Made by a program: the position numbers and the translations under genes
The notes under the pieces: model-generated
Told to the model about the DNA's origin: nothing
Seen by the model: only the letters and a program-made list of their open reading frames with translations
Database searches by the model: none
Source of the DNA: Octopus sinensis
Lineage: Eukaryota
Direction: 5' to 3'
Assembly (NCBI RefSeq): GCF_006345805.1
Contig: NC_042999.1
Span: 70,556,001 to 70,620,000, forward strand
DNA length: 64,000 bases
Shown: piece by piece, positions 4,766 to 64,000 of the stretch
Layout of the letters: the number at the start of each line of letters is the position of its first letter
Numbering within the stretch: position 1 is the stretch's first letter

Positions 4766-4835
<70 letters not shown>

Positions 4836-5715: not shown

Positions 5716-5770
<55 letters not shown>

Positions 5771-33856: not shown

Positions 33857-33944
33857 ATTAAGTAAAGGTCCAAAAATAGTCAAAAATATATATTGAGAAA
33901 AAGAGGAAGGTATATGAATATTTGGTATAGGTGTTATATTAATG

Positions 33945-34836: not shown

Positions 34837-34839
34837 TCT

Positions 34840-35785
34840 TTTGTATGTGAGCTGTTGTGGTCACCATTTGTTGAACACACTTTTCTGCAGCTCATCTCCT
34901 TGACAGAACCACAGTACTGGATCAGGCATAGACTGAAGCAGGGTGCTTGGCACCTAGAGTGTCTCCGAGTGCTCACAGCTCTCAGCCAGTCAGGCAATGT
35001 GGTCGGTAGAAGTTCCACCTTGGAGTTCTATAGGGGATTAATGGAGGGCAAGAGTGATGACATACTCAGACAGGTCCTGGTGTTGAGGAGGATCAACTGG
35101 CTGGTCTCTTCCAGAGGACTTTCAGGCCGGGAACAATGGATAACTTTCATAAATCCCTGGCCTGGCAGTGCTACCAAGGAGCGCTGCCAGTTCAAGATAA
35201 GCTCTATAGGCACGGGTGTGCAGTCAGTCAGTCTGAGATGCACACAGAGCAATGAAACCGTTCTGTTTGCTCTAGTACAGTACTTGCACATTGCTGACTT
35301 GTGGAGCTTTGTCAAACAGTTATTGTTGCATGTAAGGTGGATCTGGCTATCATCCAAGTCCATTGTGAAGCTCGCCCTGCCTTCTTCCTTTGGCCAAGGC
35401 CCTATTAACTTTTTCAGGTTCCACCTGAAAAGGAAAGTGAGGCTGGAGAGGGAGGTACTGTCACCCAGTAAGTTCATTGAAAGGTGGGTGAATGTGGCAA
35501 GAATGGCCCATGTGGATGGGCCTACTCTAAGTGTGTGCCTGTAGACCAGAAGGAAAGAAGAAGAAAGGGTGCCTTCCTGAGGAGCCATTGGTGTTAAGCG
35601 GTTCAAAGTGAATGCCTCTTTGCTCACCTTATGGTGGAACTCCCCATTGTTGGAAGTATATTGTTGATTTAATCTCTTTGTTAATTGTGTTTGTTGGCTG
35701 TTTACACGTTTAACCTCACTGTCCCTTGTCTGTGTATTGTCCTCTATGTTTTGTGTTCAGCCCTGGTGGCCAGTAAAGAAAGAAT
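34840..35785 (+). mobile_element. Tx1/L1-clade LINE, 3' fragment (ORF2 C-terminal Cys/His region and 3'UTR)
   Basis: ORF 34834-35544 with FYRGLMEGKSDD, LRCTQSNETVLFALVQY (decayed CxxC-ETxxH-like motif) and FFRFHLKRKVRLERE..F.ERWVNVAR. Ends AGTAAAGAAAG followed by (ATT)n. Confidence 0.7.
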
Positions 35786-43230: not shown

Positions 43231-43818
43231 CCACCTGCTGTTAGTTTTATTACTATTATTATTAAATCTGGCAGAACTAGTAGGACATCAGACAATAATT
43301 TGTGTTATTTAATTGCATCTCTTTATATTGGGAGTTTAAAAGTCTTTCTGAAGTTAATTTTTGCTTTTCATCCTTCTGTATTTGATAAAATAAAATACCA
43401 GTCATGTCCTGGGACTGATTTCATTAACTGCTCTATCCCCTCAAATAAGCTATAGTTGTGTGCTTCACTTAGGAATTGCTATTATTAAGGCAAGTTAAGC
43501 CTCTGCACATAGGCTCCATCATCATCATCATCATTATTTAACATCTGTCTTTTATGGTGGCATGGGTTGGATGGTTTGACAGGAGCTTGCAACCCAGAGG
43601 ACTGCACCAAGCTTCACTGTCTGTTTTGGCATGGTTTTTACAGCTGGATGCTCTTTCTAACACCAGTCACTTTACAGAGTGGACTGGAGGAAATACAAAT
43701 AACTGGTGCAACACCCACTATCTCAAGATACAAATCAAGAAAACCTTTATAAATCAGTGAAAGAAAAATCATCAATATTAAGGAAACAGACCATTCAACA
43801 CACATACATATGCACATA

Positions 43819-44713
43819 CATGTCCTGATCAATAAGTATCCAGACTGTTGCTATAGTAACAAAGCTAAAGCATGGAAAGTGAAGCTACTTGACATAGATT
43901 GATCTTGAACTCTGCTGTGCATGTGCACTAAGTTTTAACATTCTAGCTCACTTCCACTGTTTACAGCAGTGCTTGGAAGGAAGGTGGGTAGTGTGTGATT
44001 GTCGCATTGACCATGACAGAGAAAGTCGAGCAGAGAATCTACATCAAATTTCGCAAAAAGTTTCGCAATACCTGCTCAGAGGCCTATGCAAAGTTTTCAA
44101 AAAGTTTTCATTGTTCTCAACACAATCAAGGAGATCTTGTGCAACTGAAATCCGAGTGTCTTTTTGGTCAGCTGAAAACTGTTTTGGTACAAACTTGGTA
44201 GACACACGTCTCATACCCAAATCTTCAGGGATAATGGACTGAACTGAACCGTAACTAATCTGCACATCCTCTGATAACTCACAAATGGTGATTCAACAAT
44301 TTCCCCTCACAGCTGCATGCACGTCTGTGATGTTTTTCTCAGTTCTGCTGGTTGCGTGTCTCCCCAAACATTCATCAATATCAACATTTTTTTGGCCATT
44401 TTGGAAACATCTGAACCACTTGTACACTTTCGTGCAGCTCATACACTCCTCTACATACACTTTCTGCAACTTTGCCCAGGCCTCTGAGCAGGTATCGCCA
44501 TGACAACTTTCTCTATCACGGTCAATGTGACGATCACACACTACATACTTTCTTTCCAAGCACTGCTGTAAACAGCAGAAGTGAGCTAGGATGTTAATAC
44601 TTAGTGTGCATGCACAGCTGAGTTCAAGGTCAATCTGTGCCAAGCGGCTTCACTCTGCATGCTTTAACTTTGTTACTATGGCAACAGTCCGGATATTTAT
44701 TGATCAGATCTCG
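43819..44713. mobile_element. Non-autonomous mariner derivative with two 5' ends facing each other (~280 bp inverted arms)
   Basis: TA on both flanks. The left arm encodes MTEKVEQRIYIKF..TCSEAY; the minus strand encodes TCSEAWAKLQKVY..VYKWFRCFQNG and IIPEDLGMRRVSTKFVPK (mariner HTH and WVPR-like linker). No catalytic domain. Confidence 0.88.
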
Positions 44714-46503: not shown

Positions 46504-47473
46504 CCATGATTTTTCCAGGCATTGCTGTTTAGGATTTTACCTTATAAACTACTGGGTAGGGGGATACATTGGCTGCTATTTTAAGCGTGTTGAGTGACCA
46601 GGTAGAGGCTTTTTCATTGGTTTGATTGTGTGATGAAATTCTTTTACACATATATGTATAATATGAATATATATCATCAGCAGAAGTTAGAGAGTCAGTC
46701 AAAAGCTGAGAGTTTCATGTATTGGCATTTATCAAACACAAATTTGTCCATTGTCACTCTCTAACTTGTGACGAAATAACTTCTAAAATGCAAAATTTTG
46801 TCAAAAATGTTAAGAGTAAACCCTGTTGTATGTGACACATTGTACCAGTATTGGAAGTTTCAAAGTGTTTAGTCAAAAAAAAATAATTAAATAATCTAAA
46901 CGTCAAATTGAATAGTTCTGAAATGGATAAAAAGTAAAGTTGACCTCAGCAGAATTTGAACAAAAATTGTAAACACAGCCAAAATACCTATTTCTTTATT
47001 ACCCACAAGGGGCTAAACATAGAGGGGACAAACAAGGACAGACATAGGTATTAAGTCGATTACATTGACCCCAGTGTGTAACTGGTACTTAATTTATCGA
47101 CCCCAAAAGGATGAAAGGCAAAGTCGACCTCGGCGGAATTTGAATTCACAACGTAACGACAGACGAAATACCGCGAAGCATTTCACCCAGCGTGCTAACG
47201 TTTCCGCCAGCTCGCCACCTTAGAATGTAAACTTTCATTTTAGCAATATATTCTTTATTATTCTTATTGCTAAGCATTACTTCCTTACATGAAATTTCAT
47301 GGCATTTCACCCCATAACTTTTCTTCTACTGGTTACACTAGAAGCAGTGTACAGTGAACAGAAGATAATGGGACATGTGATAAAGGAAAGTGCAAAGGGG
47401 TGGGAGTAAATGATAGGGTTATTAGAGAGATGAGACACTATAAGAGCTGCAGAGTTGACAGTTATATATGTAT

Positions 47474-47629: not shown

Positions 47630-47896
47630 AAAACACAAAGAAAGAAAATACAAAGAAAGAAAACACGAAGAAAGAGAATGGAAAGAAAGATCATATGAAG
47701 AAAGATAATACAAAAAAAGATAATATAAAGAAAGACAATATGAAGAAAGACAACAACAAAAAAGAGAGCAAAAGGTCTCAAAAGAAAAAATCTGGTGTCT
47801 GCTCAGTGCTTGGCAAATTCTTGCTTGTTATTGTGCTCTGTTCCTCAGCATTTGTCACGTTATACTTTCTGAATGATAATGTTCGTGAAATTGTTG
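47630..47896 (+). CDS. ASPH: ASPH-like exon 2: KKEN/KKDN repeats plus signal-anchor transmembrane helix
   Basis: Acceptor TTTTTTGTTTTCTTTCAG|A at 47629/47630 and donor G|GTAAGT at 47896/47897; 267 nt, phase 1-1. Encodes ENTKKENTKK...KKKSGVCSVLGKFLLVIVLCSSAFVTLYFLNDNVREIV (basic tail, then a hydrophobic stretch). Confidence 0.8.
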
Positions 47897-49799
47897 GTAA
47901 GTATTTAAAACTTATTTTTGGTGCTCTTGTTTTAATTGATAATGTCTTGTGTTAGTAAAATTGTTGTTTTTGTTGATGATGTGTAACCTTTACATCAGCC
48001 TTCTTCATTGCTACTGCTATTGTTTAGGTATAGTGATCCCAGTTGGTCTTGCTTGAGCTGAGCTATAATTATTGTTGCTGGGGATTAGTGACTCTAGTCA
48101 GTCATGTTTGAATAGATCTATAGTTTAAGGGTAGCCAACTGAACAATGAGGGGGCATCTTGCAAGTTTGTACTTTGAATATGCTGAAACTGTTTCTTTTG
48201 AGGTCAGGGGTTTGAAAAGTCCAGAAGAAAGATACCTTTAAATTATGATTATATGATTGCATTAAAAAAAATATATAAACAACATAACCCGAAGCTATCT
48301 TCTCAGTAAGATAAAGTATGATTATATACAGATAATTGAATGTTATGTATTGTGTGATAAAATCTATAATTAATCTGAGTCACTTTCTGTCAGAGCTACC
48401 CCATATTCTGTATACAACAGAATTTCTTTATAAAGTATATATGCCTAAACGAGACAGCATGTGTCTTTTTAAGTTAACTAGTTCTTGTAAGAGTTCAAGC
48501 AGACTTAAGATTATGAGTCTGTTTCCTGATTTTGTGCACTCATTAAGTTGGGGTTTAAACTCCTAAAATATTCACAGTTTACATACTGTACTTATATACA
48601 ATCAATCAGATATTATATGTGCTGTATTGTGTAATATATACTTAGTCTTTGTCATTTTCGTTCAAGCAGTGTTACATTCTGTTTATAATGTGTACACTTA
48701 AATGAGAGTGCAATGTAACATAGGTTTACTGGATGTTGTACAGGTCTAAATGATCTTGAATTTGCATTAGTCTTCCTAATCCAACAATCTCATTAATTTG
48801 GGTTTCAACCCAGAATAATCTTAGCAACAAAACCAGATTACTTCATATACTGTGTGGTATAATTTATGATTAATATAGACTAGTTTGCGAGTAGCGACTT
48901 GATTGTTAAGGTACCACTAGAGAATCTGTGGCCAGGTAGGATATTTGGTGGTCAAGCAGTCTAGCTAACACCATTTCTTATCAAGTATACCTCAGAGAAG
49001 ATTTGGTCTCAGCACAACCAAATAAATACTTGTCAGGTGTAATGCTGAAGCATATATTATACTAATAGAAAGTTTGCAACTCTGTATTCCATTTTATCCA
49101 TATTTTTATCAAAAAAATTTTGTCAGTCATTGTAAGTCTGACTGTCATCAATGGACATGATGTAAGTGTTGCAGAGATTTTATAGAGATTTAATGGAAGA
49201 GGTTTCTTTAAAACAAATGTAGTACTGTTGAGTCTCATTACCTATTAGATCATCAGATGTCTTTGAGGATTTCATTGTATGATATGTTTCTAATAGTCAA
49301 AATGAGGCTGGTGATGCAGGTTCTCCCAGTTATTGACACTTATGTGTATAATCATCATCATCATCATCGTTTAGTGTCTGCTTTCCATGCTAGCATGGGT
49401 TGGGCGGTTCAACTGGGGTCTGGGAAGCCAGAAGGCTGCACCAGGCCCAGTCTGATCTGGCAATGTTTCTACGGCTGGATGCCCTTCCTAACGCCAACCA
49501 GTCCGTGAGTGTAGTGGGTGCTTTTTACGTGCCACCAGCACAGGTGCCAGACGAGGCTGGCAAACGGCCATGATCGGATGGTGCTTTTTATGTGCCACCG
49601 GCACGGGGGGCAGGCGAGGCTGGCAACGGCCACGAACGGATGGTGCTTTTTACGTGCCACTGGCACGAGGCCAGTCGGGGCGGTGCTGGCAATGGCCACG
49701 TTCGGATGGTTCTCTTACGTGCCACCGGCACTGGTATCACAGCTGCAATTTCCATTGATGTTGAAAATGTTCAATTTAATAATGTTCAATTAAATTTCT

Positions 49800-50560: not shown

Positions 50561-52859
50561 TGTAGAAGGCCCTCTAGAAATACTGTGGTTGCTGGGGTAC
50601 TTAAGGAGATAATACAAGATTATTCACCTAAGAAAGAGCAGCTTCCAAAGACATTACCTACCTGCTCTGACACCATTACACTCTAACATACAGTGACATT
50701 ACACAAGGTAAGGTGCAGCTGAAAAGGTATGTTGAAAGACTGAGGTAGTGACTCAAATGCTTGTAGCAAAGTAAACTTTACTTGCAGTGCTTGAAGGCCA
50801 TTTGCTGTTGTTTTTCCTAGTCTCCCCTCTTTGAATAATATGAGGACTTGGGTGATTTATTGCAGTATGAATACAAGGAAGGCTATCTTATAGGACTGAA
50901 TCCCATTTTCCTGTGCTTATCATTTTCATTTTGAAGTGATCAAAGCTGCTTTGTTGTGGCTGTAGAAGCCACATCTCTCCTATGGTTCTGCTCAGCTGAT
51001 TGTAGGTTTGAGAGTTAAATCTACCAGCCTAAAGACAGGATAGAATAGAATGAAGGAAGAGAAGAGGAAGTAGGGAGATAAATCCATAAATTGAAAGTAG
51101 GTGCAGAGGATGAAGGTAGCATGAAGAGGTGACAATATTAGAAATTGGGATCAGAATGCTGTTGCTGTCTTCATCATCATTTAAATGTCCATCTTCCATG
51201 CTGGTATGGGTTGGACAGTTTGACAGGAACTGGCCAGGCAGGAGTCTGCACCAGACTTCTGTGTCTGCTTTGGCAGGATTTTTACAGCTGGATGCCCTTC
51301 CTAACACCAACCACCCAGCAGAGTAGACTGAGTCCTTTTATGTGACACAAGCACATGCAAGGTCAGTTTTGGCAAGGTTTTTACAGCTGGATGCCCTTCC
51401 AAACACCAACCACTTTACAGTGTGGACTAGATGCTTTTTACATGGCATCAGCACTGGCAGGGTCACCAAGTAGCAGTACTGTATATAAAGGAGACATAGG
51501 ATTGAAACAGTATCAACTTGTTAGCTTTGATTCAATGAGCTAGCATCCTGTGACTCACTAACAGATTTACTTGATTTTAGTATAGTGCAGTATTTAAGTG
51601 TAGGGCTAATTATTAAAAGTTTGGATGAAATGAAGTCATATCATTATTTTACATTTGAATATACAATTAAATTCTATACATTTTTTATGAAAATAAAATA
51701 AATAAATTAGAAAAACAACTATTATTTATAATCTATCATATATATGTAGGTATGTTTGTTTGACTTACTATGATGTTTAATTTTTATTAATCTTATATGT
51801 ACACTAATTAATGCTTGAGTTGTCTCACTTTGGCTGCAAAGAGTCATTCATGTAAATCAAATTTTTATACTTTTCAAGAATGATATAACAGTCAGAATTT
51901 TTTATTGATGACTCCCATACTTTAAGGGTTAAAATTTAATATGTTGTAGAGCTCCAGGTCAGCTCAAATCAAAAATACTCCAGCCTTAACAATTCCATCT
52001 AATTGTATATCCAAAACTGCATTAGTCTCTGTTTTCATTAGGTTGGCTTTAGGAAGGGCATCCAGCTGTAGAAACCATGCCAAAGCTAACACTAGAGCTC
52101 TGCACAATCCTGCAGCTTCCTGGATTCTGTGAAATTGTCTAACCCATGCCAGCATAGAAAACGGATGTTAAGTGATGATGATGATGAATGTCTGTCATTC
52201 AGTAGTGTATGATGTAAGGAAGATTGGCCTCTGTTTCTACCTGCTTAAGTGCCCCCATAATGACTTCTTTCAACATACATAATAGTTGCAATGTTTTGGC
52301 TATTGAGCAAACATAATCAAAGATGCCTTGTTTTATATGTCTGTAACTACATTGCCCAATGTCTCCTTCCATTTTGTAAAATTGGAATGTGATTTAAGAA
52401 AGATTTAGCTGCTATTTCTAACAGGTCAAACAACCGTTATTGACTCAAAACTTAATGTTTTATCTATAAATATTCAAAACCATTATATTATATATGCATA
52501 TTAGTTGAAACATTGTATATCATTGATTGAAACCAATCAGTTCTGATCAACATGCCATATGAAACTGATCAAGTAATTATGTAAATTGACATTAGCTCAG
52601 TTATGAATTTTGTTGTTTAACACAAGTGAGCTCTAGTCAGATAGTGCTATGATCAAAGGCATTTTCAATTCTGATCTTCCAATCTTTACTTGAAGCATAA
52701 CATATCCAAAGCTAAATTATTTGATGTATCCTGCTTTTCCTTTCTTAGGCAATAGATTTAAGAGAGATTTGATTGCTACTTCTTTACTAAACTCCCTCAT
52801 TGGCTTAAAATAAGATATGTATGTTGTAGCTGAAACCTAGTATAATTTATATATGTATC

Positions 52860-53857: not shown

Positions 53858-55487
53858 ATCCCCATATTGAAAAAGCAAAGATAGTTTCAGATGCCTACAT
53901 TGGAAAAGCTATGTTAACCCTGTTTCCAAAAAGTGATGCTCCAGACACTGATACTCCAGAAGAAAAAGTGAAAGAATCTTACCCATTAGAAAATGATTTT
54001 ATTGATGATGGTGAAGGAGAATTACAAGGCAATTTACCACCTCCTGATACAAAAGAATCTGATTCTTTGGGCGATGACAAGTTGAAAGAAAGTAAATCAC
54101 AAAAAACTGCTGAAGCAATAAAGGAAACAGCTGAAAAAAGTCAAAAGGCAGCAGAGGAGGCTAAGAAGGCTGAAGAGGCTAAGAAAGCTGAAGAAGCCAG
54201 AATAGCAGCAGAAGAGGCTAAGAAAGCTGAAGAGGCCAGATTAGCAGAAGAGGCTAAAAAAGCTGAAGAAGCCAAAATAGCAGCAGAAGAGGCTAAGAAA
54301 GCTGAAGAGGCCAGATTAGCAGAAGAGGCTAAAAAAGCTGAAGAGGCCAGAATAGCAGCAGAAGAGGCTAAAAAGGCTGAAGAGGCCAGAATAGCAGCAG
54401 AAGAGGCCAGAATAGCAGCTGAAGAGGCTCAACAAGCAGAAGAAGCCAGAAAAGCCGAGGAGGCTAGACTAGCTGAAGAGGCTCGACAAGCAGAAGAAGC
54501 CAGACTAGCTGAAGAGGCTCGACAAGCAGAAGAAGCCAGAAAAGCTGAAGAGGCTAGACAGGAAGAAGAAGCGAAGAGAGCTGAAGAGGCTAGACAGGAA
54601 GAAGAAGCTAAGAGAGCTGAAGAGGCTAGACTGCTAGAAGAGGCAAGAATAGCAGAAGAGGCTAGACTAGCAGAAGAGGCTAGACTAGCAGAAGAGGCTA
54701 GACTGGAAGAAGAAGCTAAGAGAGCTGAGGAAGCTAGACAGGAAGAAGAGGCTTGGAGAGCTGAGGAAGAGGCTAGACGGGAGGAAGAGGCTAGGAGAGC
54801 TGCTGAGGAAGAGGCTAGACGGGAGGAAGAGGCTAGGAGAGCTGCTGAGGAAGAGGCTAGACGGGAGGAAGAGGCTAGGAGAGTCGCTGAGGAAGAGGCT
54901 AGAAGAGCTGCTGAGGAAGCTAGACGGGAGGAAGAGGCCAGGAGAGCTGCTGAGGAAGCTAGACAGGAGGAAGAGGCTAGGAGAGCTGAGGAAGCTTGGA
55001 GACAGGAAGAAGAGGCTAGGCGGGAAGAAGAAGCTAGGAGAGCTGAAGAGGCTAGACAGGCAGAAGAGGCTAGGAGAGCTGAGGAAGCTAGACAAGCAGC
55101 TGAGGAGGCTAGGAGAGTTGCAGAGGAAGCCCGAGAAGCAGAAGAACTTAGAAAAGCAGAAGCTGAAAAAGCAGCTGAGGAGGCCCGTAGATCTGCTGAA
55201 GAAGCACAACGAGAAGCAGAAGAAGCAAGAAAAGCAGAGGAAGTGAGAATAGCTGCAGAAGAGGCCAGGAGAGATGCAGAGGAAGCAAGGGAGGCTGAAA
55301 GACAAAAAGAAGCTGAAAGACTAAAAGAGACTGAAGAAGCTAGTGAAAAAATAGAAGAATCAAATAATTCAGCTAAATCAAAAAAAAAGTCAAAAAAAAT
55401 GAATCTTATAAAAAAAGTGACATAACCAATGAAGATGATCGCAAAATTCAAAAAGAACTGGATGCAGCTGATGAATTATTGGAAAAA
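53858..55487 (+). CDS. ASPH: ASPH-like exon 3: acidic luminal segment, ~400 aa E/A/R/K repeat, start of pre-TPR region; one-base frame break near 55380-55399
   Basis: Long polypyrimidine tract and CAG|AT acceptor (phase 1, G|AT = D, compatible with exon 2). Open to TAA at 55425. The -1 frame reads [29 protein letters not shown] to an AAA|GTGAGT donor at 55487/55488, with 9 of 22 identities to recalled human ASPH LLNKFDKTIKAELDAAEKLRKR. Confidence 0.82.
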
Positions 55488-55504
55488 GTGAGTCCTTAAA
55501 TGAA

Positions 55505-55510
55505 AATAAA
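55505..55510 (+). terminator. Candidate intronic poly(A) signal AATAAA just after the exon 3 donor
   Basis: AATAAA starts 17 nt after the GT at 55488, following GTG AGT CCT TAA, with T-rich and GT-rich sequence downstream. AATAAA is common by chance in AT-rich DNA. Confidence 0.35.
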
Positions 55511-56059
55511 TTTATAATTGTAATTTTTACCATCTTTTTTTTTTCAATCCTTTTATTGATATGTGTGTGTGTGTTTTGTGTGTATGTGTATGTATATGCT
55601 CACTTAGTCTTGAATCTTCCAATTCAAAAAAAAATATGCATTACCTTATTTTATTGTATATAAGTATTTCTTTCATACCCAACTATAATTTTTAATATAT
55701 CTAAAGTGTTTCACTTCAGAAAACAGTGGTTGTAAGGTTATGGCGCTAAATAATACAGACCATATCAAATAAGGTTATGAGTTTAAACCTAACTATTACT
55801 ACACTTTATGTTTGGGCAAGATCTCACAATTCTGTTGCCTGGCAGACAATATACACCTAGGTTTGGTGGAACAAACAGGATAAATAGAACTTATTACATA
55901 AGTATATAAATATTGTTTATCATTTTCAATTATAAAGTTATAACCTAATTCAAGGGCTGGGAGTTTCATGCATAGCCCTTTTGCAATTTCCTTATGCAAA
56001 CACAAAATTCTTGGCCCTTGAGTCATTTTGTAACTTCTGCTGATTAGTAATAATAATAA

Positions 56060-56350
56060 TAATATTAAGTGATGAAAACTCACAGCTTATTTTGCTGGGT
56101 ATAATGGAATGTGTCAGCTGTCCACAGCCAGCAGATTAAGGTGACACTTGTTTACTAGTCATGCTTCAAGAACCCTAATTCTTGCAGTTCCAAGCAATGC
56201 TGATTTTTGTAAGTGTTCTACCTTCACACTTGCACCAATCTTTTTCAGCCATGCTGGTAGTTGAGTAGCTGATACTTCCAGGTACACCAATTACTATTGA
56301 TATCACGTCTACTCTCCTCATTGACCACAACCTTCATATTTTCCACTTCA
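56060..56350 (-). mobile_element. RLE-type LINE extreme 3' fragment
   Basis: AWLKKIGASVKVEHLQKSALLGTARI on the minus strand, the same terminal motif as 42640-43230. Confidence 0.7.
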
Positions 56351-57559
56351 AATTGTTATAGTTGTTTATTTTTTCTTCTTTCACATTGATCTTGTCACCA
56401 TGGCATACTGTGTCAATTATCATGCATACACATATGTGCATACATATATACACTCACACACATACACATACACATGCATTACTTTATTGCTAGCTGTTTT
56501 TCTCCCAATAACATACAACACAGACAAAATGTGGAGTGATGAATCCCATCCATGTTAACATAGAAAAACAAATAGATGGAAAAGTTTCTAAAAAGATGGA
56601 AGCAGTTACTATATACATATAAGCATTGATTGATTTTATGATTATGATGGACCCTAAGCAGCGAGCTGGCAGAATTGTTAGCACACCAGGCGAAATGCTT
56701 AGCAGTATTTCGTCTGCTGCTATGTTCTGAGTTCAAATTCCACTGAGGTTGACTTTGCCTTTCATCCTTTCAGGGTTGATAAATTAAGCACCAGTCAAGT
56801 ACTGGGGTCAATGTGATTGACTACTCCACTCCCCTCAAAATCCAGGCTTTGTGCCTATGATTATGATAGACCCTCCATCGATTTTGGCAATAAACATTTT
56901 GTTGTTCAATCAATTGTACTACCCACTTGTTTAATGTGGAACTGATTCAGTATTTCACAGACACATGTAGACTTAACATAATTCTCAGGTCAAATCAGTA
57001 TGACAAAATATGTGACAAGGTTAGGACTTCAAATTACTAGTATGATTCAGCCAATGGACTTTCACAGTTTATATCAATAACAGATTCATTTATAAGGCTT
57101 TGGTTAGTCCAGTGTTATAGTAATACACATGACCAAGATGAAACCTAATGTGACAAAACTTAAGAAATATACATATTTTCTGAGTTCAGTTCCACCAGTA
57201 GTACACACACACATATACACACACACCACTGTCATCATTTTTACACAAGCTTCTCTATGTTGACATGAGTGGAAAAATCTTCACAGTTCAAGTCAGTTAT
57301 TATATGGAGTTATTGTCCTCCTAGTTGGGTCTCACTTGTATGTCCTATCTTTTGGTCTGGTTTCTACTGTGAGTGCCCTTCCTATTGCAAACTACTTATT
57401 AACGCAATGTGCTAGGTGTATTTTGTCATGGCATCAAGTACAGATAAGTTGTCTTGCCCTTGGCAGAACTAGTGTGTGCTCTCTATCAAATATTGTGGAT
57501 AGTGAAAAGTTGTTTTTTATGATACTAAATCTATTATATTATTCTTCAACATGATTGTA

Positions 57560-58080
57560 GAAGAATAATATATTTTGTTAGAGAGGAGGAGGAGGTAGAG
57601 TAAGAGAGCAGATAGCCAGCTGATGCATTATGCTGTTACTCGTGCAGTTTGTAGAAGTGAAAGATGAAGAGAGAGAGAGAGTGAAGTGCTAAGGACATGA
57701 AATGGGGAATTACATGGTTTTAAAATTTGTTGAAGAGGTAGCAAGAAAGAGAGAAATATAGGTTGTTAGACTCACTCACCATTCTTCTGTTGACAGAATT
57801 CAGTGGGTTCTATCATAATACAGCACAAGAGGTGGAGTATCTTTTACACAATAAATGTAGAGAGTATTCCATAACATATGCCCTGTAGAGTAGACCAAGA
57901 AGAGTAGGAGCAATGAAAAAACACAGGCCAGAAAGGAGTCGCTGAGAAGTGGAGATGGGAATGTAAGTGTGGAGAGTATTCAATAGCCCAGGGCACATAC
58001 ATTTGCTCAGGTGACTGGATAAGGAGGGTTAAGGATGCCAAGTGAAGTAAGAGAAAAGCTGGACAAGGTACAAAATACCT
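57560..58080 (-). mobile_element. Very decayed L2/Jockey-group LINE RT C-terminal region
   Basis: Weak IRP.LEY.SH-like segment and the same strand bias as 49800-50560. Confidence 0.3.
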
Positions 58081-59072
58081 CAGTCTCTAAACACTACTCT
58101 TGTGTTATGGTATATTTTATGTATGTAGTTATATATATGGCATAGGTGTGGCTGTGTGGTAAGAAGCTTGCTTCCCAACCATATCGTTCTGTGTTCAGTC
58201 CCAATGCATGGCACCTTGGACAAGTGTCTTCTACTATAGCCTTGTGCCAATCAAAGCCCTTGAGTGGATTTGGTAAATCGAAACTGAAAGAAGCCCATCA
58301 TGTATGTATGTATGTATGTATGTAAATATTTTTGTGTTCGTCCTCCTGCCGTTATTTGACAACCAATGATGGTGTGTTTATGTCCCTGTAACTTAGCAGT
58401 TCAGCAAAAGAGATCAATAGAATAAGTACTAGACTTACAAAGAATAAGTCCTGGGGTCAATTTCTTTGACTAAAAATCCTTTAAGGTGGTGCTCCAGCAT
58501 GGCTGCAGTCAAATGACTGAAACAAGTAAAAGAATATATATATATATGGCAAATGAAAGTTGGAAGATGGATTATACAAGAATTTATTATTAATCACGAC
58601 AATTGTTTCGACATCTAGCATCGATTCCTCATTTTATTATCGATTATATATACAGATCAAATTTGTAGAAAAATAAAAAAACGAAGACAGGTATATGAAC
58701 AACAAGTAAGTGTACTAGTTTGACACTTGGGAAAAATGAAAAAAATCTTTTACATATATATATAGTTTTATTAAACTGTTGCTCCCCACCATCACCTCTT
58801 TATGTACTACCACTTATCACTCCCTCCCTGACCCACTCCTATTTTCTTTCATTTTCACTATTAACCACACTTCCACCTGTGTTCACCCCTTTTTGCCTTC
58901 ACCTCTGTCTCCATCTCTAATCATATGTCCCTCTTGTTTCACATTCTCCCAAATTTGCCCATCCATACAACCTGATCCACTGTCCCTTTATTCCTCATAT
59001 CCACCTTGTACCTTGAAGGTACAACCTGACACCTCATAACCCCCATCATTTCTCCCTTTTCAGCAAGACACC

Positions 59073-59114
59073 AAATATGAGAGACAGGAACTGGTGTTCC
59101 TGTCTCTCATATTT
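59073..59114. repeat. Perfect 19 bp hairpin with TGGT loop
   Basis: AAATATGAGAGACAGGAAC-TGGT-GTTCCTGTCTCTCATATTT. Confidence 0.9.
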
Positions 59115-60538
59115 TAGCCTCTCAGCACATGGCACAGAGCCATCAGTTCTGCTCCCCTCCCCCCACTTAGTCTTGCAAGTTTCTTGGTGACCTCACTAAT
59201 ATGCCAATGTCATGAAAAAGGTACTCAGTACACTCTGTAAATTGCTTGGCATTAGGATAGGCATACAGCCATAGAAACCATAGAATGTCAAAGCAGACAT
59301 TGTAGTCTGATGCAGTCTCTCTGGCTCATCAGATGTTGTCACACCATCTAACTTATACCAGCATAGAAGATGTGCTTTAAATGATGATGTTGATATATAT
59401 ACATCATCAGATGTTAACTGATGATGATAATGTACTGTATATGACACATGCACACATATATGAAGTTTATATCAAAAGTAATGCAAAGGTAGATATAACT
59501 TTTCTATTAATCAACATAGGTAATTCAAATTGTACATGTAGGTTGAGTAACTCTTCCCCTATACAAAATTACTACTCAATATTGAATCTATCACAAGCGA
59601 TGCATTTGAGTCATTGCAAAATCCAACTCTCAAATCCTCTTTAAAAACATTCAGATGTACATTGTTGTACTCATGTCTTTGTAGCCATTTTCACCTTATC
59701 TGCCTCATCAAACCATTGTTTTCAATGATTGTCCTTCATTGGACTGTAAAAGTAGAAGTCAGAGAGAACTAGATCTGAGTTATGCAGTGGATAGAGGAAC
59801 CACTGACCATTTCAGTTTGCTGATTTCTTGATTTTTTGCTAAAGATGTGTGTAGTTAGGCATTATGATGGTGAACATGGGTTGTTTTCAGATTCTTACTG
59901 GCCTTTTCTTCCTAAAGGCCTCTCTTAGCTTAGTTGAGTATAACAAACCATTCCAAATCCTTGTTATAGTATCCATATGGATGGAGTTAGGACTGGGTAG
60001 CTTGTACTAGCATAGAATTTTATAATATATAATAATGACGTCAAACTAAATTTTGATATTTTGAATGCATTTAATACATATATTTCTGATAGTTGCACAA
60101 TAAATGAAAAGACAATTTTACATTTTACACAAAATCTTCCTCTGTGAAAACAACATACATATGTATGTATATATGCATATATGTATATACGTATGTATGC
60201 ATAGGCAGACTGGCCAACTTACCCAATGGCAAGTAGGCCCCTGTGCCATTAGAATTCATATGTGGGGGTCCATGTTTGTATCTAAGGAGCCCATCCCCCT
60301 AAGTTAGAGAATTTATATTCACTCCTGGAAGAATGCATTAATTATTTCAGCTTGGCTGTGTTTGTAGACAGTTGAAAAGAATACTTTTAGCAAAAACAAA
60401 ATAATAAATGATAGCATTGTAGTTGCGAGTGGGCCCCCTTAGTCTCCTGACAACCAATATTTTTAGACCCAGTCCACTACTGTATGTATGTATGTATGTA
60501 TGTATGTATGTATGTATGTATGTGTATATATATATATA

Positions 60539-62051
60539 TCAGGTTAGTGCAAAAGTAATGTCCAATTTAAAGATCTAAGGTAAAAATGAAAAAGCCAATG
60601 ACAATGGAAATATTTATTCATTAACATACAGGTGCAGGAGTGGCTGTGTGGTAAGTTGCTTGTTTACCAACCACATGGTTCCGGGTTCAGTCCCACTGCG
60701 TGGCACCTTGGGCAAGTGTCTTCTACTATAGCCTCGGGCCGACCAAAGCCTTGTGAGTGGATTTGGTAGACGGAAACTGAAAAGAAGCCCGTCGTATATA
60801 TGTATATATATATATATGCGTGTGTGTGTCTGTGTTTTTCCCCCTAGCATTGCTTGACAACCGATGCTGGTGTGTTTATGTCCCCGTTACTTAGCGGTTC
60901 GGCAAAAGAGACCGATAGAATAAGTACTGGGCTTACAAAAAGAATAAGTCCCGGGGTCGAGTTGCTCGATTAAAGGTGGTGCTCCAGCATGGCCGCTGTC
61001 AAATGACTGAAACAAGTAAAAAGAGTAAAGAGTATACTCTCCATTGCTTTCAATGACCTCATTCTATCTATCAACAAACCTGTTTCAGTCTCTTCTCTTG
61101 TTGTTAGCCTAGGTCCATCTAAATGGTTCTGTAGTCCACAAAACAAATGGTATTCAGAAGGAGCAAGGTCAGGAGAATATGGAGGATGAGGCAGTGTTTC
61201 CCAACCAAGTTCTTCCAAGAGAGTTTGGTCAGTCAAGCTGTGTGAGGATAAGCATTATTGTGATGGAAGATGACATTCTTTCTGTTAACCAAGGATGCTT
61301 ACACTTGACTCAGAACTGTTTTCAAATGAAGTTGCTCACAGAAAATATTGGATTATTCTTTTAATATCCTACCATACACTCAACATGTTCTTCTTTGGAT
61401 GAAGTCCTGCTCTCTGTTGTTGAACTGGCTATCCTCTTCGACTGATCCAAGAATGGTGGCATTTAACATTATGGTAAAGAATCCACTTCTCACCACCTGT
61501 AACAAGTCCGTCTAAAAATGTTGCTTGAAAGTGTCGCGAAAGCAATGATTGACAAAAAGCAGCATGCTGTTGTCGATTCTCTGGAGACAGCTCATGAGGG
61601 ACCCATTTTCCAGCAAGTTCACTAGTGGTAACGGTCGGGTTCTCTGAAACAAGAGCTTCCAACATTTCGGAATCAAGTTTTTTTGGACAACCCTCTTTTG
61701 GCTCTTCTTTCAAAGTGAGATCACCACTTCGGAAATGAGAAAACCACCTCCTGTAACTTCTTTCATTCACTACATCATCCTCATAAGTGCTCTGAATAGA
61801 TCTTGCTACTGTACTTGCATTAACACCTGAAAACTCGTAGAGTAAAACATTTCTTATGTGATCTTTAGATGGAACAAACATGGTGGTAAAATTTTCTGAG
61901 ATTTATGGCCAGAAGTTAGATAATCTGAAAGAAAATAGTACAAATTAGACACAGAGATATCTTAAAACCATAAGAAGAGGTTTAAAAAATTGATAAATTC
62001 ACTCTGAAACATTTTTTCTAGAAATCGGACATTACTTTTGCACCAACCTGA
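60539..62051 (-). mobile_element. Decayed mariner (Hsmar1/cecropia-like TIRs) with a SINE inserted at ~60630-61030
   Basis: TIRs TCAGGTTAGTGCAAAAGTAATGTCC / GGACATTACTTTTGCACCAACCTGA with TA flanks. Transposase motifs GKWVPHEL, VTGGEKWILY and HPPYSPDLAPSEYHLF. Confidence 0.92.
60630..61030 (+). mobile_element. tRNA-derived SINE family A, full length. Other copies (approximate) at 9650-9770, 9805-10200, 10750-10910, 44990-45110, 58140-58535, 63772-64000 (+) and 615-760, 18245-18405, 37980-38200 (-)
   Basis: GGCTGTGTGGTAAG A-box-like, GGTTCAGTCCC B-box-like, ACCTTGGGCAAG core, internal (TA)n/(TG)n, simple-repeat tail. Confidence 0.88.
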
Positions 62052-62057
62052 TATGTA

Positions 62058-63213
62058 CAGGGGCTGGACAAAATAATGGAAACACCTTAAAATTTCAAAC
62101 AAATTTATTTTAATATGGAGTAGGACCCCCTTTGGCAGTAATTACCACTTGAATTGTACTCATACAAAGTCTGAGTTGTTTCCAAAGGCATTTTAGTTCA
62201 TTCTTCAGCTAAAAAAGTCTCCAGTTCTTGTAGTGATGATGGTGGAAGATATCGACTCCTTATTTGTTTTTCTAAAATGCACCATAAATGTTCAATAATA
62301 CTGAGATCTGGGGACCGTGGTGGCCAGATAAGATGTTCAACTTCACTAGAATGTTCCTTATGCCATTCAGTAACAATTTTAGCTGTGAATTGGTGCATTA
62401 TCAGCCTGAAAGATTGTGTTTCCCTCCATAAACAGTTCGGCAACTATAGGATGAATGTGATCAGATAAAATACTTAACCCTTTCGTTATTGTATTTATTT
62501 TGAGATGCTCTGTGTTTCTTTCAATTACTTTAAATATAACAAAGGATTTAGTAAAATAACTTTTAGTTATCATTCAGCTAGTGTTAGGAACATAAATTGT
62601 GACTAAGGTTTGGTGGAAGATTTTAATTCAAAACTTATGAAAACAAGACATTTGTACTCAGAGCCAGAGCTGGATTCAGCCAGGTTGGTAATGAAAGGGT
62701 TAAATAGTCTTGCCTATTAATTCTGCCATGAAGGGAAACCATTGGACTGGTGGATTTCCAAGATGTAGCGCCCCCCCCCCCACACACACACACAGATCAT
62801 CACATATCCTCCTCCATGTTTAACAGTTGGAAGAAGGCAGTCTGGGTCAAATGCTTCTTTTGGCTGTCTCCACATGTATACTCAGCCGTAGGTCAAAAAT
62901 AAGGTAATGGATGACAAGTCCGAGGAAATAACATTCTTCCACTGTTTTTGTTACATGAGTGGCTGCCATACGAACACCAACAATTTAACCACTTAGAAAA
63001 TCCAATAGATCTGTCATTTTAATGAATTTTAATTACCTTTTTCTGATGATATCTGGAAAAAAAACCCGCAATTTTAAGCAAAACCTATTAAGCAACGCTA
63101 ATTATAAATTTAAAAAAAAACATAAAAATAAATAAGCTTTTGACGGTTTTATAGATATTTCAAAATTATGATGGTGTAAGGCTAGGTGTTTCCATTATTT
63201 TGTCCAACCCCTG
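62058..63213 (-). mobile_element. Decayed Tc1-like transposon with a piggyBac-type MITE inserted
   Basis: TIRs CAGGGGCTGGACAAAATAATGGAAACACCT / AGGTGTTTCCATTATTTTGTCCAACCCCTG. Motifs FQADNAPIH, WPPRSPDLSIIEHLW and PTVKHGGG. Confidence 0.92.
62474..62703. mobile_element. piggyBac-type MITE
   Basis: TTAA-CCCTTTC ... GAAAGGG-TTAA. Confidence 0.75.
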
Positions 63214-63408
63214 AATATATATATATATATATATATACACTCACACACACACGTTTATATTGTATACAGATGTCGGATTGATTGAGTCATTAGAGCGTTG
63301 GATAGATTGCTTTGTAGTAATCATTCTGTAACTCACACTATGGTTGACTTTGCCTTTTGTCCCTTTCCAGTGGATAAATAATATACCAGTCTTGAAATGG
63401 GGTTGATT

Positions 63409-63464
<56 letters not shown>

Positions 63465-63671
63465 TATCTCTCTTTATTTCTTTCTTTCTTTCTGTCTGTC
63501 TAACTTTCTCCAGGAAGAAATTGGCTGTGGTCAGACCTAGAGAGGGATGGGATCCACCAGACCTAAAAGTACTCAAGACATGCTGCATATAACAATAGCA
63601 CTCTTATTGTTCAATCCAAGATTTGAGAAACCAAAGCAAGTCATATATATTTGTGAGTGTGTGTGTGTGAG

Positions 63672-63710
<39 letters not shown>

Positions 63711-63735
63711 GAGTGTGTGTGTGTGTGTGAGATTT

Positions 63736-63771
<36 letters not shown>

Positions 63772-64000
63772 CGCAGGAATGGCTGTGTGGTAAGTAGCTT
63801 GCTTACCAACCACATGGTTCTGGATTTATTCCCACTGCGTGGTACCTTGGGCAAGTGTGCAAGTGTCTTCTACTATAGCCTTGGGCCGACCAGAGCCTTG
63901 TGAGTGATTTTGGTAGACAGAAACTGAAAGAAGCCCGTCGTATATATATATATATGTGTGTGTCTTTGTTTGTCCCCCAACATCACTTGACAACCGATGG

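What the first reader, a model, noticed from the sequence alone, without database searches (positions are those of the whole stretch)
54110..55345. ~400 aa E/A/R/K helical repeat (single-alpha-helix-like) in the ER-luminal stalk of ASPH
Seen: about 410 residues with no Pro or Gly, built from [19 protein letters not shown] units, then [14 protein letters not shown] units (36-42 bp DNA repeats whose composition drifts from K to R), all in one exon. Known: alternating E4/(R,K)4 patterns form stable single alpha helices, and vertebrate ASPH has an acidic Ca-binding stalk here instead. Inference: fully helical this would span about 60 nm (0.15 nm per residue). It could act as a luminal spacer (Climp-63-like role), a tether for the hydroxylase domain, or a high-capacity Ca buffer, and may be a lineage-specific and length-polymorphic expansion.
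Basis: partly seen in the sequence, partly recalled or inferred. Interest (0 to 1): 0.7.

Follow-up and report, generated by a model that had tools for sequence, protein, structure and literature searches.

The report
Long charged helical stalk exon
One large exon of a membrane-anchored, probably ASPH-like gene encodes about 410 residues of Glu/Ala/Arg/Lys repeats that should form a single very long alpha-helix, a spacer type already seen in many proteins; the ASPH identity and the single-helix (monomeric) state are plausible but unproven.

Summary
Window 54112-55344 (+) encodes 411 residues with no Pro or Gly (E 147, A 124, R 68, K 28). They are built from about 59 EEA[R/K]x[A/E] hexapeptide units (18-bp period; higher-order periods 36, 42, 54 and 75 bp). 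Lys dominates early and Arg later. All of it lies in one 1630-nt exon (53858-55487) with canonical splice sites. That exon is phase-compatible with an upstream exon (47630-47896) encoding a Lys-rich tail plus a transmembrane segment.

AlphaFold2 predicts one continuous 418-residue helix. The charge pattern is strongly single-alpha-helix (SAH)-like, and there is no heptad seam. However, E+K+R is only 59% and Ala 30%, against 78-79% and 3-11% in validated ER/K helices, and net charge is -52. Helical is likely; monomeric is uncertain.

ASPH identity rests on topology and one directed match: the exon's last 36 residues align to the human ASPH stalk/TPR junction (0 of 3000 shuffles reach the score). 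Pfam, PDB and database searches found no ASPH support, and no TPR or oxygenase exon lies in the window.

As assembled, the repeat frame stops at 55423-25 and the ASPH-like junction is in another frame. A one-base length difference in an A-run would reconcile them. Similar long E/A/R/K spacers occur in hundreds of unrelated proteins. Moderate interest.

The parts
47630..47896 (+). Upstream coding exon. It encodes a Lys-rich cytosolic tail made of about 8 pentapeptide (ENTKK-like, 15-bp) repeats, followed by one transmembrane segment (GKFLLVIVLCSSAFVTLYFL). It starts with 2 nt of a split codon and ends with 1 nt (G|GTAAGT).
   Evidence: Sequence and ORF; TRF period 15 with 7.7-8.6 copies; splice sites and phases. 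The positive-inside rule places the N-terminus in the cytosol (inference).
53858..55487 (+). The large 1630-nt exon that holds the whole stalk. The acceptor is CAG|AT, and AT completes the GAT codon begun by the G at 47896. The donor is AAA|GTGAGT.
53858..54111 (+). Non-repetitive, acidic, Pro-containing juxtamembrane segment (about 84 aa), predicted disordered.
   Evidence: AF2 pLDDT is below 50 for most of residues 1-77 of the exon translation. No significant similarity to human ASPH and no database hit.
54112..55344 (+). E/A/R/K helical repeat of 411 aa with no Pro or Gly: about 59 EEA[R/K]x[A/E] units, Lys-rich in the first half, Arg-rich in the second, net charge -52.
54760..54874 (+). 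Perfect 42-bp tandem repeat (about 2.7 copies, 100% identical; the [14 protein letters not shown] unit). This is the youngest part of the array and the most likely site of copy-number variation.
   Evidence: the repeat finder family D3; TRF period 42 with 88% matches.
55380..55425 (+). Frame break. It contains A9 (55380-88), A8 (55392-99) and A7 (55410-16) runs. The repeat frame ends at TAA 55423-25. The other frame is open from 55377. One extra base here would give an uninterrupted exon ending in phase 0.
55377..55487 (+). Lys-rich patch plus ...[17 protein letters not shown], in the frame shifted by one base. This is the only part of the window with significant similarity to ASPH (human residues 323-354, the junction between stalk and first TPR helix). 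It ends exactly at the splice donor.
   Evidence: tblastn E = 0.002 in the 8.7-kb tail. Smith-Waterman score 64, with 0 of 3000 shuffles as high. The remembered human sequence was validated.

Best explanation
The region is the coding sequence for the stalk of a type II (N-in) single-pass membrane protein, most probably the ASPH orthologue of an AT-rich metazoan genome.

The product would have these parts in order:
- a Lys-rich cytosolic tail and a TM helix;
- an acidic, disordered segment of about 84 residues;
- about 410 residues of EEA[R/K]x[A/E] hexapeptide repeats;
- a short Lys-rich patch;
- the first helix of the C-terminal (TPR/oxygenase) part, which continues in exons outside the window.

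The repeat most likely folds into one long, solvent-exposed alpha-helix. It would be stabilised by high Ala/Glu helix propensity and by dense i/i+3 and i/i+4 Glu-Arg/Lys salt bridges, like an ER/K or SAH-type helix. It would act as a semi-flexible spacer or tether that holds the C-terminal domain tens of nanometres from the membrane. The contour length is about 62 nm and the expected rms reach about 32-41 nm, comparable to the roughly 50 nm lumen of an ER sheet.

Its excess of about 50 unpaired Glu would also give it the low-affinity cation (Ca2+) binding character of the acidic vertebrate stalk it replaces.

The array grew by tandem duplication of 18-bp units and higher-order blocks, with a Lys-to-Arg shift along it.

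Shown: sequence, repeat anatomy, coding frame, splice phases, charge pattern, predicted helix. Inferred: topology, luminal location, monomeric state, spacer function, ASPH identity.
For: - Composition and repeat anatomy.
- Coding frame: variation is highest at third codon positions, and the ORF extends into unique sequence on both sides.
- Splice sites: canonical, and phase-compatible with the TM exon.
- Predicted structure: AF2 gives a single helix at residues 80-497, pLDDT 70-92.
- Charge pattern: E->K/R at i+3 z = 13.9; K/R->E at i+4 z = 8.4; same-sign i+3/i+4 pairs z = -8 to -10; all K/R are partnered.
- No seam: 5.8% bulky hydrophobics, none in heptad register, and no 3.5/3.6 periodicity of apolar residues including Ala (z = 0.4 and -0.9).
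- SAH-like score (my own): 0.35 overall and 0.41 in the Arg-rich half, against 0.14 for shuffles, 0.42 for the Myo10 SAH, 0.53-0.54 for validated ER/K linkers and -0.05 for the GCN4 zipper.
- ASPH junction match at the expected place and ending at the donor.
- The ASPH domain order (cytoplasmic, TM, luminal charged, Ca-binding, catalytic) matches the architecture (PMC7433162).
- Analogues: unrelated proteins use similar E/A/R/K stretches between an N-terminal anchor and a C-terminal domain, for example an OmpA-family protein with a TM segment plus a 341-aa Pro/Gly-free stalk.
Against: - E+K+R is only 59% and Ala 30%. Validated ER/K helices have 78-79% and 3-11%. Natural SAHs have about 80% charged or polar positions (PMC5812594).
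- The nearest tested designs misbehaved. AEEAKKA repeats dimerised, and the Arg-rich designs AEEERRR and AEEEKRR aggregated (PMC5347031).
- Basic residues (23%) cannot pair all Glu (36%).
- AF2 on a single sequence draws long helices for many charged low-complexity sequences and cannot tell a monomer from an oligomer.
- ASPH identity has no Pfam, PDB or orthologue support.
- As assembled, the repeat frame terminates before the ASPH-like peptide.
- No transcript evidence for the exon 2-exon 3 junction was available.
Confidence: 0.45

Rival explanations
1. Same exon and same helix, but the helix self-associates as an Ala-mediated (Alacoil-like) antiparallel or parallel dimer, or a higher oligomer. 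The stalk would then be an oligomerisation or bridging rod, closer to the CLIMP-63 luminal domain than to a monomeric SAH.
For: - 30% Ala and only 59% E/K/R.
- The de novo AEEAKKA repeat, almost identical to the [14 protein letters not shown] units here, was highly helical but dimerised, and Arg-rich designs aggregated (PMC5347031).
- Locally, three consecutive 7-mers (AEEARIA; around residues 79-106 of the stalk, about 54346-54430) put Ala/Ile at 87.5% of a/d positions.
- Local 3.5-periodicity is modestly above shuffles (1.83 against 1.09 +/- 0.29).
Against: - The dominant unit is a hexad, not a heptad. Ala recurs every 3 residues, so no 3-4-3-4 seam persists.
- Global 3.5/3.6 power for apolar residues is at background.
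- Net charge of -52 per chain disfavours close packing.
- Bulky hydrophobics are 5.8% and irregularly spaced.
Confidence: 0.2
2. The segment is mainly a high-capacity, low-affinity Ca2+ buffer: a polyanion like the acidic region of junctate/humbug or calsequestrin-type proteins. Its helicity and length would be incidental, and as assembled the product is a catalytically dead, junctate-like truncated protein ending at 55425.
For: - 148 acidic residues, net charge -52 and pI 4.7.
- About a quarter of Glu have no K/R at i+3/4.
- It occupies the position of the Ca-binding domain of vertebrate ASPH.
- Vertebrate ASPH loci make truncated Ca-handling isoforms (PMC7433162).
- The assembled frame stops before the junction peptide.
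Against: - The strict salt-bridge register, with all K/R partnered and same-sign i+3/i+4 pairs depleted, is not needed for a buffer and is absent from vertebrate acidic stalks.
- There is almost no Asp.
- The significant ASPH-junction similarity lies in the other frame and runs exactly to a consensus donor, which argues that read-through to downstream exons is the normal product.
Confidence: 0.15
3. The gene is not ASPH but another type II or tail-anchored-like membrane protein with a charged helical ectodomain. The ELDAA match would be a coincidence between two helical, Lys/Glu-rich peptides.
For: - No Asp-B-Hydro_N Pfam hit.
- No ASPH among the best 150 relatives.
- phmmer against the PDB does not return ASPH.
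- The N-terminal region is not similar to ASPH.
- No TPR or oxygenase exon in 8.5 kb downstream.
- tblastn on the whole window gives E = 1.5.
Against: - The best local alignment of the 37-aa peptide to the 758-aa human protein falls exactly at the homologous architectural position: after the stalk, a Lys patch, then the start of TPR1. None of 3000 shuffles reaches that score, and only 1 of 3000 does without the Lys patch.
- The overall domain order matches ASPH.
Confidence: 0.3
4. The locus is a broken or mis-assembled copy. Either the frameshift is real (pseudogene or null allele), or the repeat length and A-run lengths are assembly artefacts, so the exact 411-residue figure is unreliable.
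For: - The frame break sits in a 46-nt stretch with A9, A8 and A7 runs.
- Tandem arrays with 100% identical 42-bp units are prone to collapse or expansion in assemblies.
Against: - 550 codons are open in a roughly 35-42% GC context.
- Splice signals are intact.
- A third-position-biased divergence pattern between units indicates long-term protein-level constraint.
- A single missing base in a homopolymer is the commonest assembly error and would fully restore the frame.
Confidence: 0.12

Closest known systems
ER/K or charged single alpha-helix (SAH) domains: myosin VI and X, INCENP (213 aa, about 32 nm), caldesmon, and the Trichomonas Kelch-motif protein used as a 30-nm ER/K linker
   Same: Glu plus Arg/Lys in i/i+3 and i/i+4 register, no Pro/Gly, no hydrophobic seam, a predicted continuous helix, and a position between two functional parts as a spacer (PMC4571873, PMC5552854, PMC5812594).
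   Different: - About twice as long as the longest characterised examples I could read about.
- Much more Ala (30% against 3-11%) and less charge (59% against 78-79%).
- Net charge -52.
- A regular hexad repeat rather than irregular sequence.
- Predicted luminal or extracytosolic location, whereas the known examples I read about are cytosolic or nuclear.
- The monomeric state was not tested.
De novo Ala/Glu/Lys helical repeats: EK2 (AEEAKKA)n and EK3 (AEEEKKK)n of Wolny et al. 2017, and Ala-based (EAAAK)n rigid linkers
   Same: The units [14 protein letters not shown] and AEEARKA occur literally in the first half. The same four-letter alphabet (A, E, K, R) is used.
   Different: EK2 is a strict heptad, which creates an Ala a/d seam, and it dimerised. 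The window's array is mostly hexads with no persistent seam and carries excess Glu.
Vertebrate ASPH / junctate / humbug luminal acidic (Ca-binding) stalk
   Same: The same position in a type II protein, between the TM and a Lys-rich patch plus ELDAA... helix. It is strongly acidic, and its length varies between vertebrate isoforms.
   Different: The vertebrate stalk is Pro-containing, Asp/Glu/Val-rich, multi-exon and alternatively spliced, and is not predicted to be helical. Here it is one exon, Pro/Gly-free, with Arg/Lys in salt-bridge register. There is no detectable sequence similarity in the stalk itself.
CLIMP-63 (CKAP4) luminal domain, the ER luminal spacer
   Same: A type II ER membrane protein with a long helical luminal domain of a length comparable to the roughly 50 nm sheet lumen (PMC7308479).
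   Different: CLIMP-63 is described as a self-associating coiled coil that bridges membranes. Here there is no heptad seam and no evidence of trans-association. There is no sequence relationship.
Bacterial envelope proteins with an N-terminal TM anchor plus a long E/A/K/R helical region (for example the OmpA-family protein P0016; TolA domain II, from my own knowledge)
   Same: A membrane anchor, a Pro/Gly-free E/A-rich helix of hundreds of residues, and a C-terminal functional domain, spanning a compartment of fixed width.
   Different: Unrelated proteins in a different kingdom. The similarity is compositional and convergent, and HMMER matches are confined to the repeat.

Membership tests
ASPH (aspartyl/asparaginyl beta-hydroxylase; AbH-junctin-junctate locus) | Type II topology: basic cytosolic N-terminus and a single TM segment near the N-terminus | tested here: met
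   Exon 47630-47896 encodes (ENTKK)n...KKKSG, then GKFLLVIVLCSSAFVTLYFL, then acidic flanking sequence. Orientation is inferred from the positive-inside rule.
ASPH (aspartyl/asparaginyl beta-hydroxylase; AbH-junctin-junctate locus) | N-terminal region matching Pfam Asp-B-Hydro_N (PF05279) | tested here: not met
   hmmscan of the TM plus juxtamembrane segment and of the whole exon gave no PF05279 hit at E <= 1. Smith-Waterman against human ASPH was not above shuffles.
ASPH (aspartyl/asparaginyl beta-hydroxylase; AbH-junctin-junctate locus) | Charged luminal stalk followed by a Lys-rich patch and the K-x-ELDAA-(E/D)-x-L start of the TPR region | tested here: met
   [36 protein letters not shown] aligns to human 323-354 (KAKVKKKKPKLLNKFDKTIKAELDAAEKLRKR). 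Score 64, with 0 of 3000 shuffles as high; tblastn E = 0.002 in the 8.7-kb tail. This is a weak, directed test. The peptide is in a frame shifted by one base relative to the repeat.
ASPH (aspartyl/asparaginyl beta-hydroxylase; AbH-junctin-junctate locus) | TPR repeats and C-terminal Asp_Arg_Hydrox (PF05118) 2OG-oxygenase domain | not testable with these tools
   No such exon lies in 55488-64000. The rest of the gene, if any, is outside the window, and no public copy of the locus could be retrieved.
ASPH (aspartyl/asparaginyl beta-hydroxylase; AbH-junctin-junctate locus) | Recognisable orthologues in databases | tested here: inconclusive
   The N-terminal 140 aa gave no hits and the junction peptide shared no candidate words. 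In the exhaustive HMMER search, all 635 hits lay in the repeat only, and none of the best 150 matches human ASPH.
Charged single alpha-helix (SAH / ER/K motif) | Very high E+K+R content (about 75-80%) | tested here: not met
   59% E+K+R (63% including Q and D) and 30% Ala, against 78-79% and 3-11% in validated ER/K linkers (PMC5812594).
Charged single alpha-helix (SAH / ER/K motif) | Dense opposite-charge pairs at i/i+3 and i/i+4; same-charge pairs avoided at those spacings | tested here: met
   z = +13.9, +10.5, +3.4 and +8.4 for opposite-charge pairs, and -10.1 and -8.3 for same-sign pairs. 100% of K/R have a Glu at i-3/4 and 99% at i+3/4. My own normalised score is 0.35 against 0.14 for shuffles.
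Charged single alpha-helix (SAH / ER/K motif) | No hydrophobic seam; not a coiled coil | tested here: met
   5.8% LIVMFWY. At most 25% of a/d positions are hydrophobic in any 28-residue window. No 3.5/3.6 periodicity of A/L/I/V/M/W. Caveat: one local stretch of three heptads has an Ala/Ile seam.
Charged single alpha-helix (SAH / ER/K motif) | Continuous helix predicted or observed | tested here: met
   AF2 predicts helix 80-497, pLDDT 70-92. This is a prediction only.
Charged single alpha-helix (SAH / ER/K motif) | Monomeric in solution, with non-cooperative thermal melting and salt/pH robustness | not testable with these tools
   Needs CD, AUC or SEC-MALS on the recombinant segment. The nearest tested design (AEEAKKA) dimerised.
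Canonical or Ala-based coiled coil | Persistent heptad (3-4) periodicity of apolar residues | tested here: not met
   Global power at 3.5 gives z = 0.4. The dominant period of apolar residues is 3.0, and charges repeat at about 6.5 residues.
Junctate/humbug-type acidic Ca2+-binding region | Strongly net-acidic luminal segment in a product lacking the catalytic domain | tested here: inconclusive
   Net charge -52 and pI 4.7. The assembled frame ends at 55425, but this may be a homopolymer assembly error. Ca2+ binding is not testable here.

The most novel reading that the evidence does not exclude
An invertebrate ASPH has replaced the disordered acidic stalk of its vertebrate counterparts with a genuine monomeric single alpha-helix of about 410 residues (about 62 nm contour). 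That would be roughly twice the length of the characterised natural SAHs I could read about (INCENP 213 aa; the 30-nm Trichomonas ER/K linker). It would also be the first located in the ER lumen. There it would work as a molecular ruler or tether matched to the luminal width, with Ca2+-tunable stiffness through its roughly 50 unpaired Glu, and with a copy number that varies between individuals.

A still more speculative add-on: the frame break at the A AAA AAG / A-run is real, so a -1 shift (ribosomal or transcriptional slippage) would set the ratio of a junctate-like truncated product to full-length enzyme.
Probability: 0.12. Interest if true: 0.7.

Novelty: new member of a known kind. Interest (0 to 1): 0.35.

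Why it matters
If the segment is a monomeric helix, it would be an unusually long natural ER/K-type spacer in an unusual compartment, the oxidising, Ca2+-rich ER lumen. It would offer three things:
- a natural test of how far SAH design rules stretch, here hexad repeats, 30% Ala, Arg-only basic residues and net negative charge;
- a candidate luminal tether or ruler to compare with CLIMP-63;
- an example of an enzyme stalk evolving by simple tandem-repeat expansion.

If it is merely helical and sticky, or mainly a Ca2+ buffer, it is an ordinary lineage-specific low-complexity expansion. The exhaustive search shows that hundreds of unrelated proteins carry similar E/A/R/K stretches of 200-460 residues. 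The sequence type and its length are therefore not unique; only the context is.

Tried and rejected
- **Orthologue search, N-terminal part.** The non-repetitive 140 aa gave no hits.
- **Orthologue search, junction peptide.** 41 aa; no candidate sharing words (two searches were parameter errors).
- **Chimeric query** (window junction plus human TPR/oxygenase), meant to pull out invertebrate ASPHs. It returned only primate isoforms in the best 120.
- **Exact-product look-ups** of the exon ORFs and two transposon ORFs, to find the source genome. Not on record. The organism therefore remains unidentified, and 'mollusc' is untested.
- **Pfam on the exon.** Only a sub-threshold compositional hit to Plasmodium_HRP.
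- **PDB sequence search with the junction peptide.** Returned a designed helical repeat and ribosomal L35, not ASPH.
- **tblastn of human ASPH against the window.** No TPR or oxygenase exons.
- **Primate isoform comparison**, to test whether a human intron sits at the same place as the donor at 55487. Uninformative.
- **Rfam and tRNA scans of the window.** Nothing.
- **Minus-strand ORFs across the repeat** (340 and 206 aa). Rejected as by-products of the repeat: they have TTG starts, no splice context and do not extend into unique sequence.
- **Internal acceptor at 55388-89** that would skip the stalk. Rejected because it is preceded by a purine run rather than a pyrimidine tract.
- **Donor at 55417 (AAA|GTGACA)** that would keep the repeat frame. 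Considered and judged unlikely because it would discard the only ASPH-like peptide.
Full report
**1. What is in the sequence**

The counts are E 147, A 124, R 68, K 28, Q 14, L 11, I 8, with a few S, V, T, W and D. Net charge is -52. The Pro/Gly-free run actually extends over 450 residues, 54073-55422.

The elementary unit is a hexapeptide, EEA[R/K]x[A/E], with 59 EEA motifs and occasional 7- or 8-residue variants. At DNA level this gives an 18-bp period with higher-order periods of 36, 42, 54 and 75 bp.

Lys is concentrated in the first quarter and Arg takes over later. By quarters, K = 18, 5, 0, 5 and R = 6, 16, 26, 20.

Most units have diverged to 60-88% identity. The exception is a perfect 42-bp repeat of about 2.7 copies at 54760-54874, which points to recent duplication there.

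The only correction is that the pattern is not E4/(R,K)4 but Ala-containing EEA[RK] units.

**2. Is it coding, and in which gene**

The repeat sits in a 550-codon ORF that runs on both sides into non-repetitive sequence. The exon is 53858-55487, 1630 nt. It is bounded by a long pyrimidine tract with CAG|AT and by AAA|GTGAGT.

At lag 18 bp, differences between repeat units increase from codon position 1 to 3 (98/169/226). The invariant EEA[RK] peptide is written with 21 different 12-mers. Both observations fit protein-level constraint in this frame. The long minus-strand ORFs are by-products of the repeat.

Six kilobases upstream lies another exon, 47630-47896, between CAG| and |GTAAGT. It encodes about eight ENTKK-like pentapeptide repeats (15-bp period), a poly-Lys stretch and a 20-residue hydrophobic segment. 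It ends with one base of a codon, and the big exon starts with the other two (G + AT = Asp), so the phases fit.

By the positive-inside rule the Lys-rich N-terminus is cytosolic. Everything after the TM segment, including the repeat, would then be luminal or extracytosolic. That orientation is an inference. The splicing itself could not be checked, and the first exon with the start codon was not identified.

**3. Is it ASPH**

The evidence is thin but not nil.

Negative or absent evidence:
- tblastn with human ASPH over the whole window found only a weak hit at the 3' end of the exon (E = 1.5).
- The N-terminal part shows no similarity to ASPH.
- Pfam finds no Asp-B-Hydro_N domain.
- A PDB sequence search with the junction peptide does not return ASPH.
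- No TPR or oxygenase exon lies in the 8.5 kb downstream.
- No orthologue could be found.

Positive evidence:
- Restricted to the last 8.7 kb, the hit is [36 protein letters not shown] against human 323-354, KAKVKKKKPKLLNKFDKTIKAELDAAEKLRKR (E = 0.002).
- In a directed Smith-Waterman test the peptide's best match in the 758-residue human protein falls exactly at this stalk/TPR junction. The score is 64, against 33.5 +/- 4.9 for 3000 shuffles, none of which is as high. Without the Lys patch, 1 of 3000 is as high.
- The peptide ends precisely at the consensus donor.
- The domain order matches the published ASPH plan (PMC7433162): cytosolic tail, TM, charged luminal stalk, Lys patch, ELDAA helix.

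I put ASPH identity at roughly two in three. The 'mollusc' attribution could not be tested at all.

**4.

The ASPH-like peptide (55377-55487) is not in the repeat's frame. As assembled, the repeat frame reads ...[18 protein letters not shown] and stops at TAA 55423-25, 62 nt before the donor.

The two frames overlap only in 55377-55425, a stretch holding A9, A8 and A7 runs. One additional base there would give an open 1631-nt exon ending in phase 0, with the product ...[40 protein letters not shown].

The simplest explanation is a homopolymer-length error or polymorphism. A real stop would give a catalytically dead, junctate/humbug-like product. Vertebrate ASPH loci make such truncated isoforms by alternative splicing. 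A -1 slip on A AAA AAG is formally the shift needed, but I regard that as speculative.

**5. Structure**

AlphaFold2 (single sequence) predicts residues 1-79 of the exon translation as disordered. Residues 80-497 form one uninterrupted helix with pLDDT mostly 70-92.

The charge pattern is what salt-bridge-stabilised helices need:
- E->K/R pairs at i+3 (z = 13.9) and K/R->E pairs at i+3 and i+4 (z = 10.5 and 8.4) are far above shuffles.
- Same-sign pairs at these spacings are strongly depleted.
- Every K/R has a Glu at i-3/4 and 99% have one at i+3/4.

Bulky hydrophobics are 5.8% and irregularly spaced. Apolar residues, Ala included, show no 3.5- or 3.6-residue periodicity; their period is 3.0, because Ala recurs every third residue in the hexad. 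A canonical coiled coil along the whole segment is therefore unlikely.

I wrote a simplified Waggawagga-like score, normalised to EEEEKKK = 1. The results are:

| Sequence | Score |
|---|---|
| Window stalk, whole | 0.35 |
| Window stalk, Lys/Ala-rich half | 0.28 |
| Window stalk, Arg-rich half | 0.41 |
| Shuffled stalk | 0.14 |
| Myo10 SAH | 0.42 |
| Validated 10-nm and 30-nm ER/K linkers | 0.53-0.54 |
| GCN4 zipper | -0.05 |

Control sequences came from PMC5812594 and PMC5552854.

**6. Caveats on 'single alpha helix'**

The stalk has 59% E+K+R and 30% Ala. The validated ER/K linkers have 78-79% and 3-11%, and natural SAHs have about 80% charged or polar positions.

Wolny et al. (PMC5347031) found that AEEAKKA repeats, literally the unit found here, were highly helical but dimerised, probably through an Ala seam. 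They also found that the Arg-rich designs AEEERRR and AEEEKRR aggregated.

Two features argue that this array may behave differently. Its hexad rather than heptad register destroys the Ala a/d seam, and its large net negative charge opposes association. These are arguments, not measurements. One local stretch of three AEEARIA heptads does form an Ala/Ile seam.

I conclude that 'long helix' is likely and 'monomeric SAH' is about even odds.

**7. Dimensions and function**

At 0.15 nm per residue (the value used for INCENP, PMC4571873) the contour length is about 62 nm. Fully unfolded, at 0.36 nm per residue, it would be about 148 nm.

ER/K helices are semi-flexible. Linkers of 10-30 nm contour length have end-to-end distances of about 7-22 nm (PMC5552854). 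The persistence length is about 15 nm from my own recollection of Sivaramakrishnan et al. 2009, a paper I could not read here.

A worm-like chain with a persistence length of 10-20 nm gives 32-41 nm rms reach. That is comparable to the roughly 50 nm width of ER sheets (bioRxiv 10.64898/2026.06.30.735628 abstract and PMC7308479).

The best-supported mechanism is therefore a semi-flexible tether or spacer. It would let the C-terminal domain sweep most of the luminal width while staying membrane-anchored. Weak Ca2+ binding by the roughly 50 excess Glu would be a secondary property, inherited functionally from the acidic stalk it replaces.

The rivals are a self-associating rod, a function that is primarily Ca2+ buffering, a gene that is not ASPH, and a broken or mis-assembled locus. 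They are listed with their tests in the Rival explanations section.

**8. How unusual is it**

The exhaustive HMMER search of 1.84 billion representatives found 635 proteins at E <= 0.001 (103 at <= 1e-10). All of them match only the repeat, and none covers the first 56 residues of the query.

The best hits are unrelated proteins:
- a salamander PRRC2B;
- a bacterial caspase-like protein;
- an LRR protein;
- a GTPase;
- an OmpA-family protein with an N-terminal TM segment and a 341-residue Pro/Gly-free E/A-rich stalk.

Several carry Pro/Gly-free E/A/R/K runs of 300-460 residues. None of the best 150 is an ASPH. This weakly suggests that such a stalk is not general among the ASPHs in the database, but mollusc ASPHs could not be retrieved for a direct comparison.

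The sequence type and its length are thus a recurrent, convergent spacer solution. What may be new is its use in an ASPH-like luminal stalk. I found no paper linking SAH domains with ER-luminal stalks, which is not proof of absence.

**9. Verdict**

I classify it as a new member of a known kind (an E/A/R/K helical spacer), with moderate interest (0.35). The decisive data are the downstream exons, transcripts across the A-run, and CD/AUC on the recombinant segment. All are straightforward to obtain.

Noticed in passing
window 55377-55425: The repeat frame and the ASPH-like C-terminal peptide are in different frames, overlapping only in a stretch with A9, A8 and A7 runs. As assembled there is a TAA at 55423-25. 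One extra base would restore an open exon. A AAA AAG (55383-89) is formally a -1 slippery heptamer.
   Followed up: partly
window 47630-47770: The cytosolic tail of the same gene is itself a tandem repeat: about 8 copies of a 15-bp unit encoding ENTKK/DNxKK pentapeptides, directly upstream of the TM segment. It is a second low-complexity expansion in the gene, this one very Lys-rich.
   Followed up: partly
window 55488-55510: If the intron after 55487 were retained, the junction frame would stop after three codons (GTG AGT CCT TAA). An AATAAA lies about 15 nt further on. This could be a route to a truncated junctate-like isoform, but AATAAA is expected by chance about once per 0.8 kb in this AT-rich DNA.
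   Followed up: no
window 61432-61881 (-), 44296-44643 (-), 62201-62443 (-): Fragments of Mos1/mariner-type (HTH_48) and Tc1-type (DDE_3) transposases. The copy around 44.3 kb is flanked by 202-nt inverted arms (43825-44026 and 44506-44707, 87% complementary).
   Followed up: partly
window 33890-34869, with dispersed copies at 41733-41898, 47054-47222 (inverted) and 56638-56884: A repeat unit of about 246 bp in a four-copy tandem array, with two copies 100% identical. It also occurs dispersed in both introns flanking the stalk exon. It looks like a SINE or satellite-like element.
   Followed up: no
window 3808-5736: A tandem duplication of about 965 bp with 99-100% identity between copies, rich in TA/CA microsatellite. 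It is either very recent or an assembly duplication.
   Followed up: no
window 11110-11346 / 49355-49591, 23284-23443 / 49447-49606, 18258-18410 / 60630-60782, 43537-43686 / 51181-51330: Several families of short dispersed repeats (150-240 nt, 77-92% identity) in both orientations. Many translate to the recurring '...LHQA...FLQLDALPNANHSVS...' pseudo-ORFs seen in the ORF lists. The window outside the two exons is largely repeat-derived.
   Followed up: no
window 12158-12646 (+), 22575-22847 (+): ORF fragments that look retroelement-derived: a weak PHD-like zinc finger hit, and a conserved ...GRGRPRKTWDEVVKHDL... tail. There is no significant Pfam assignment.
   Followed up: partly
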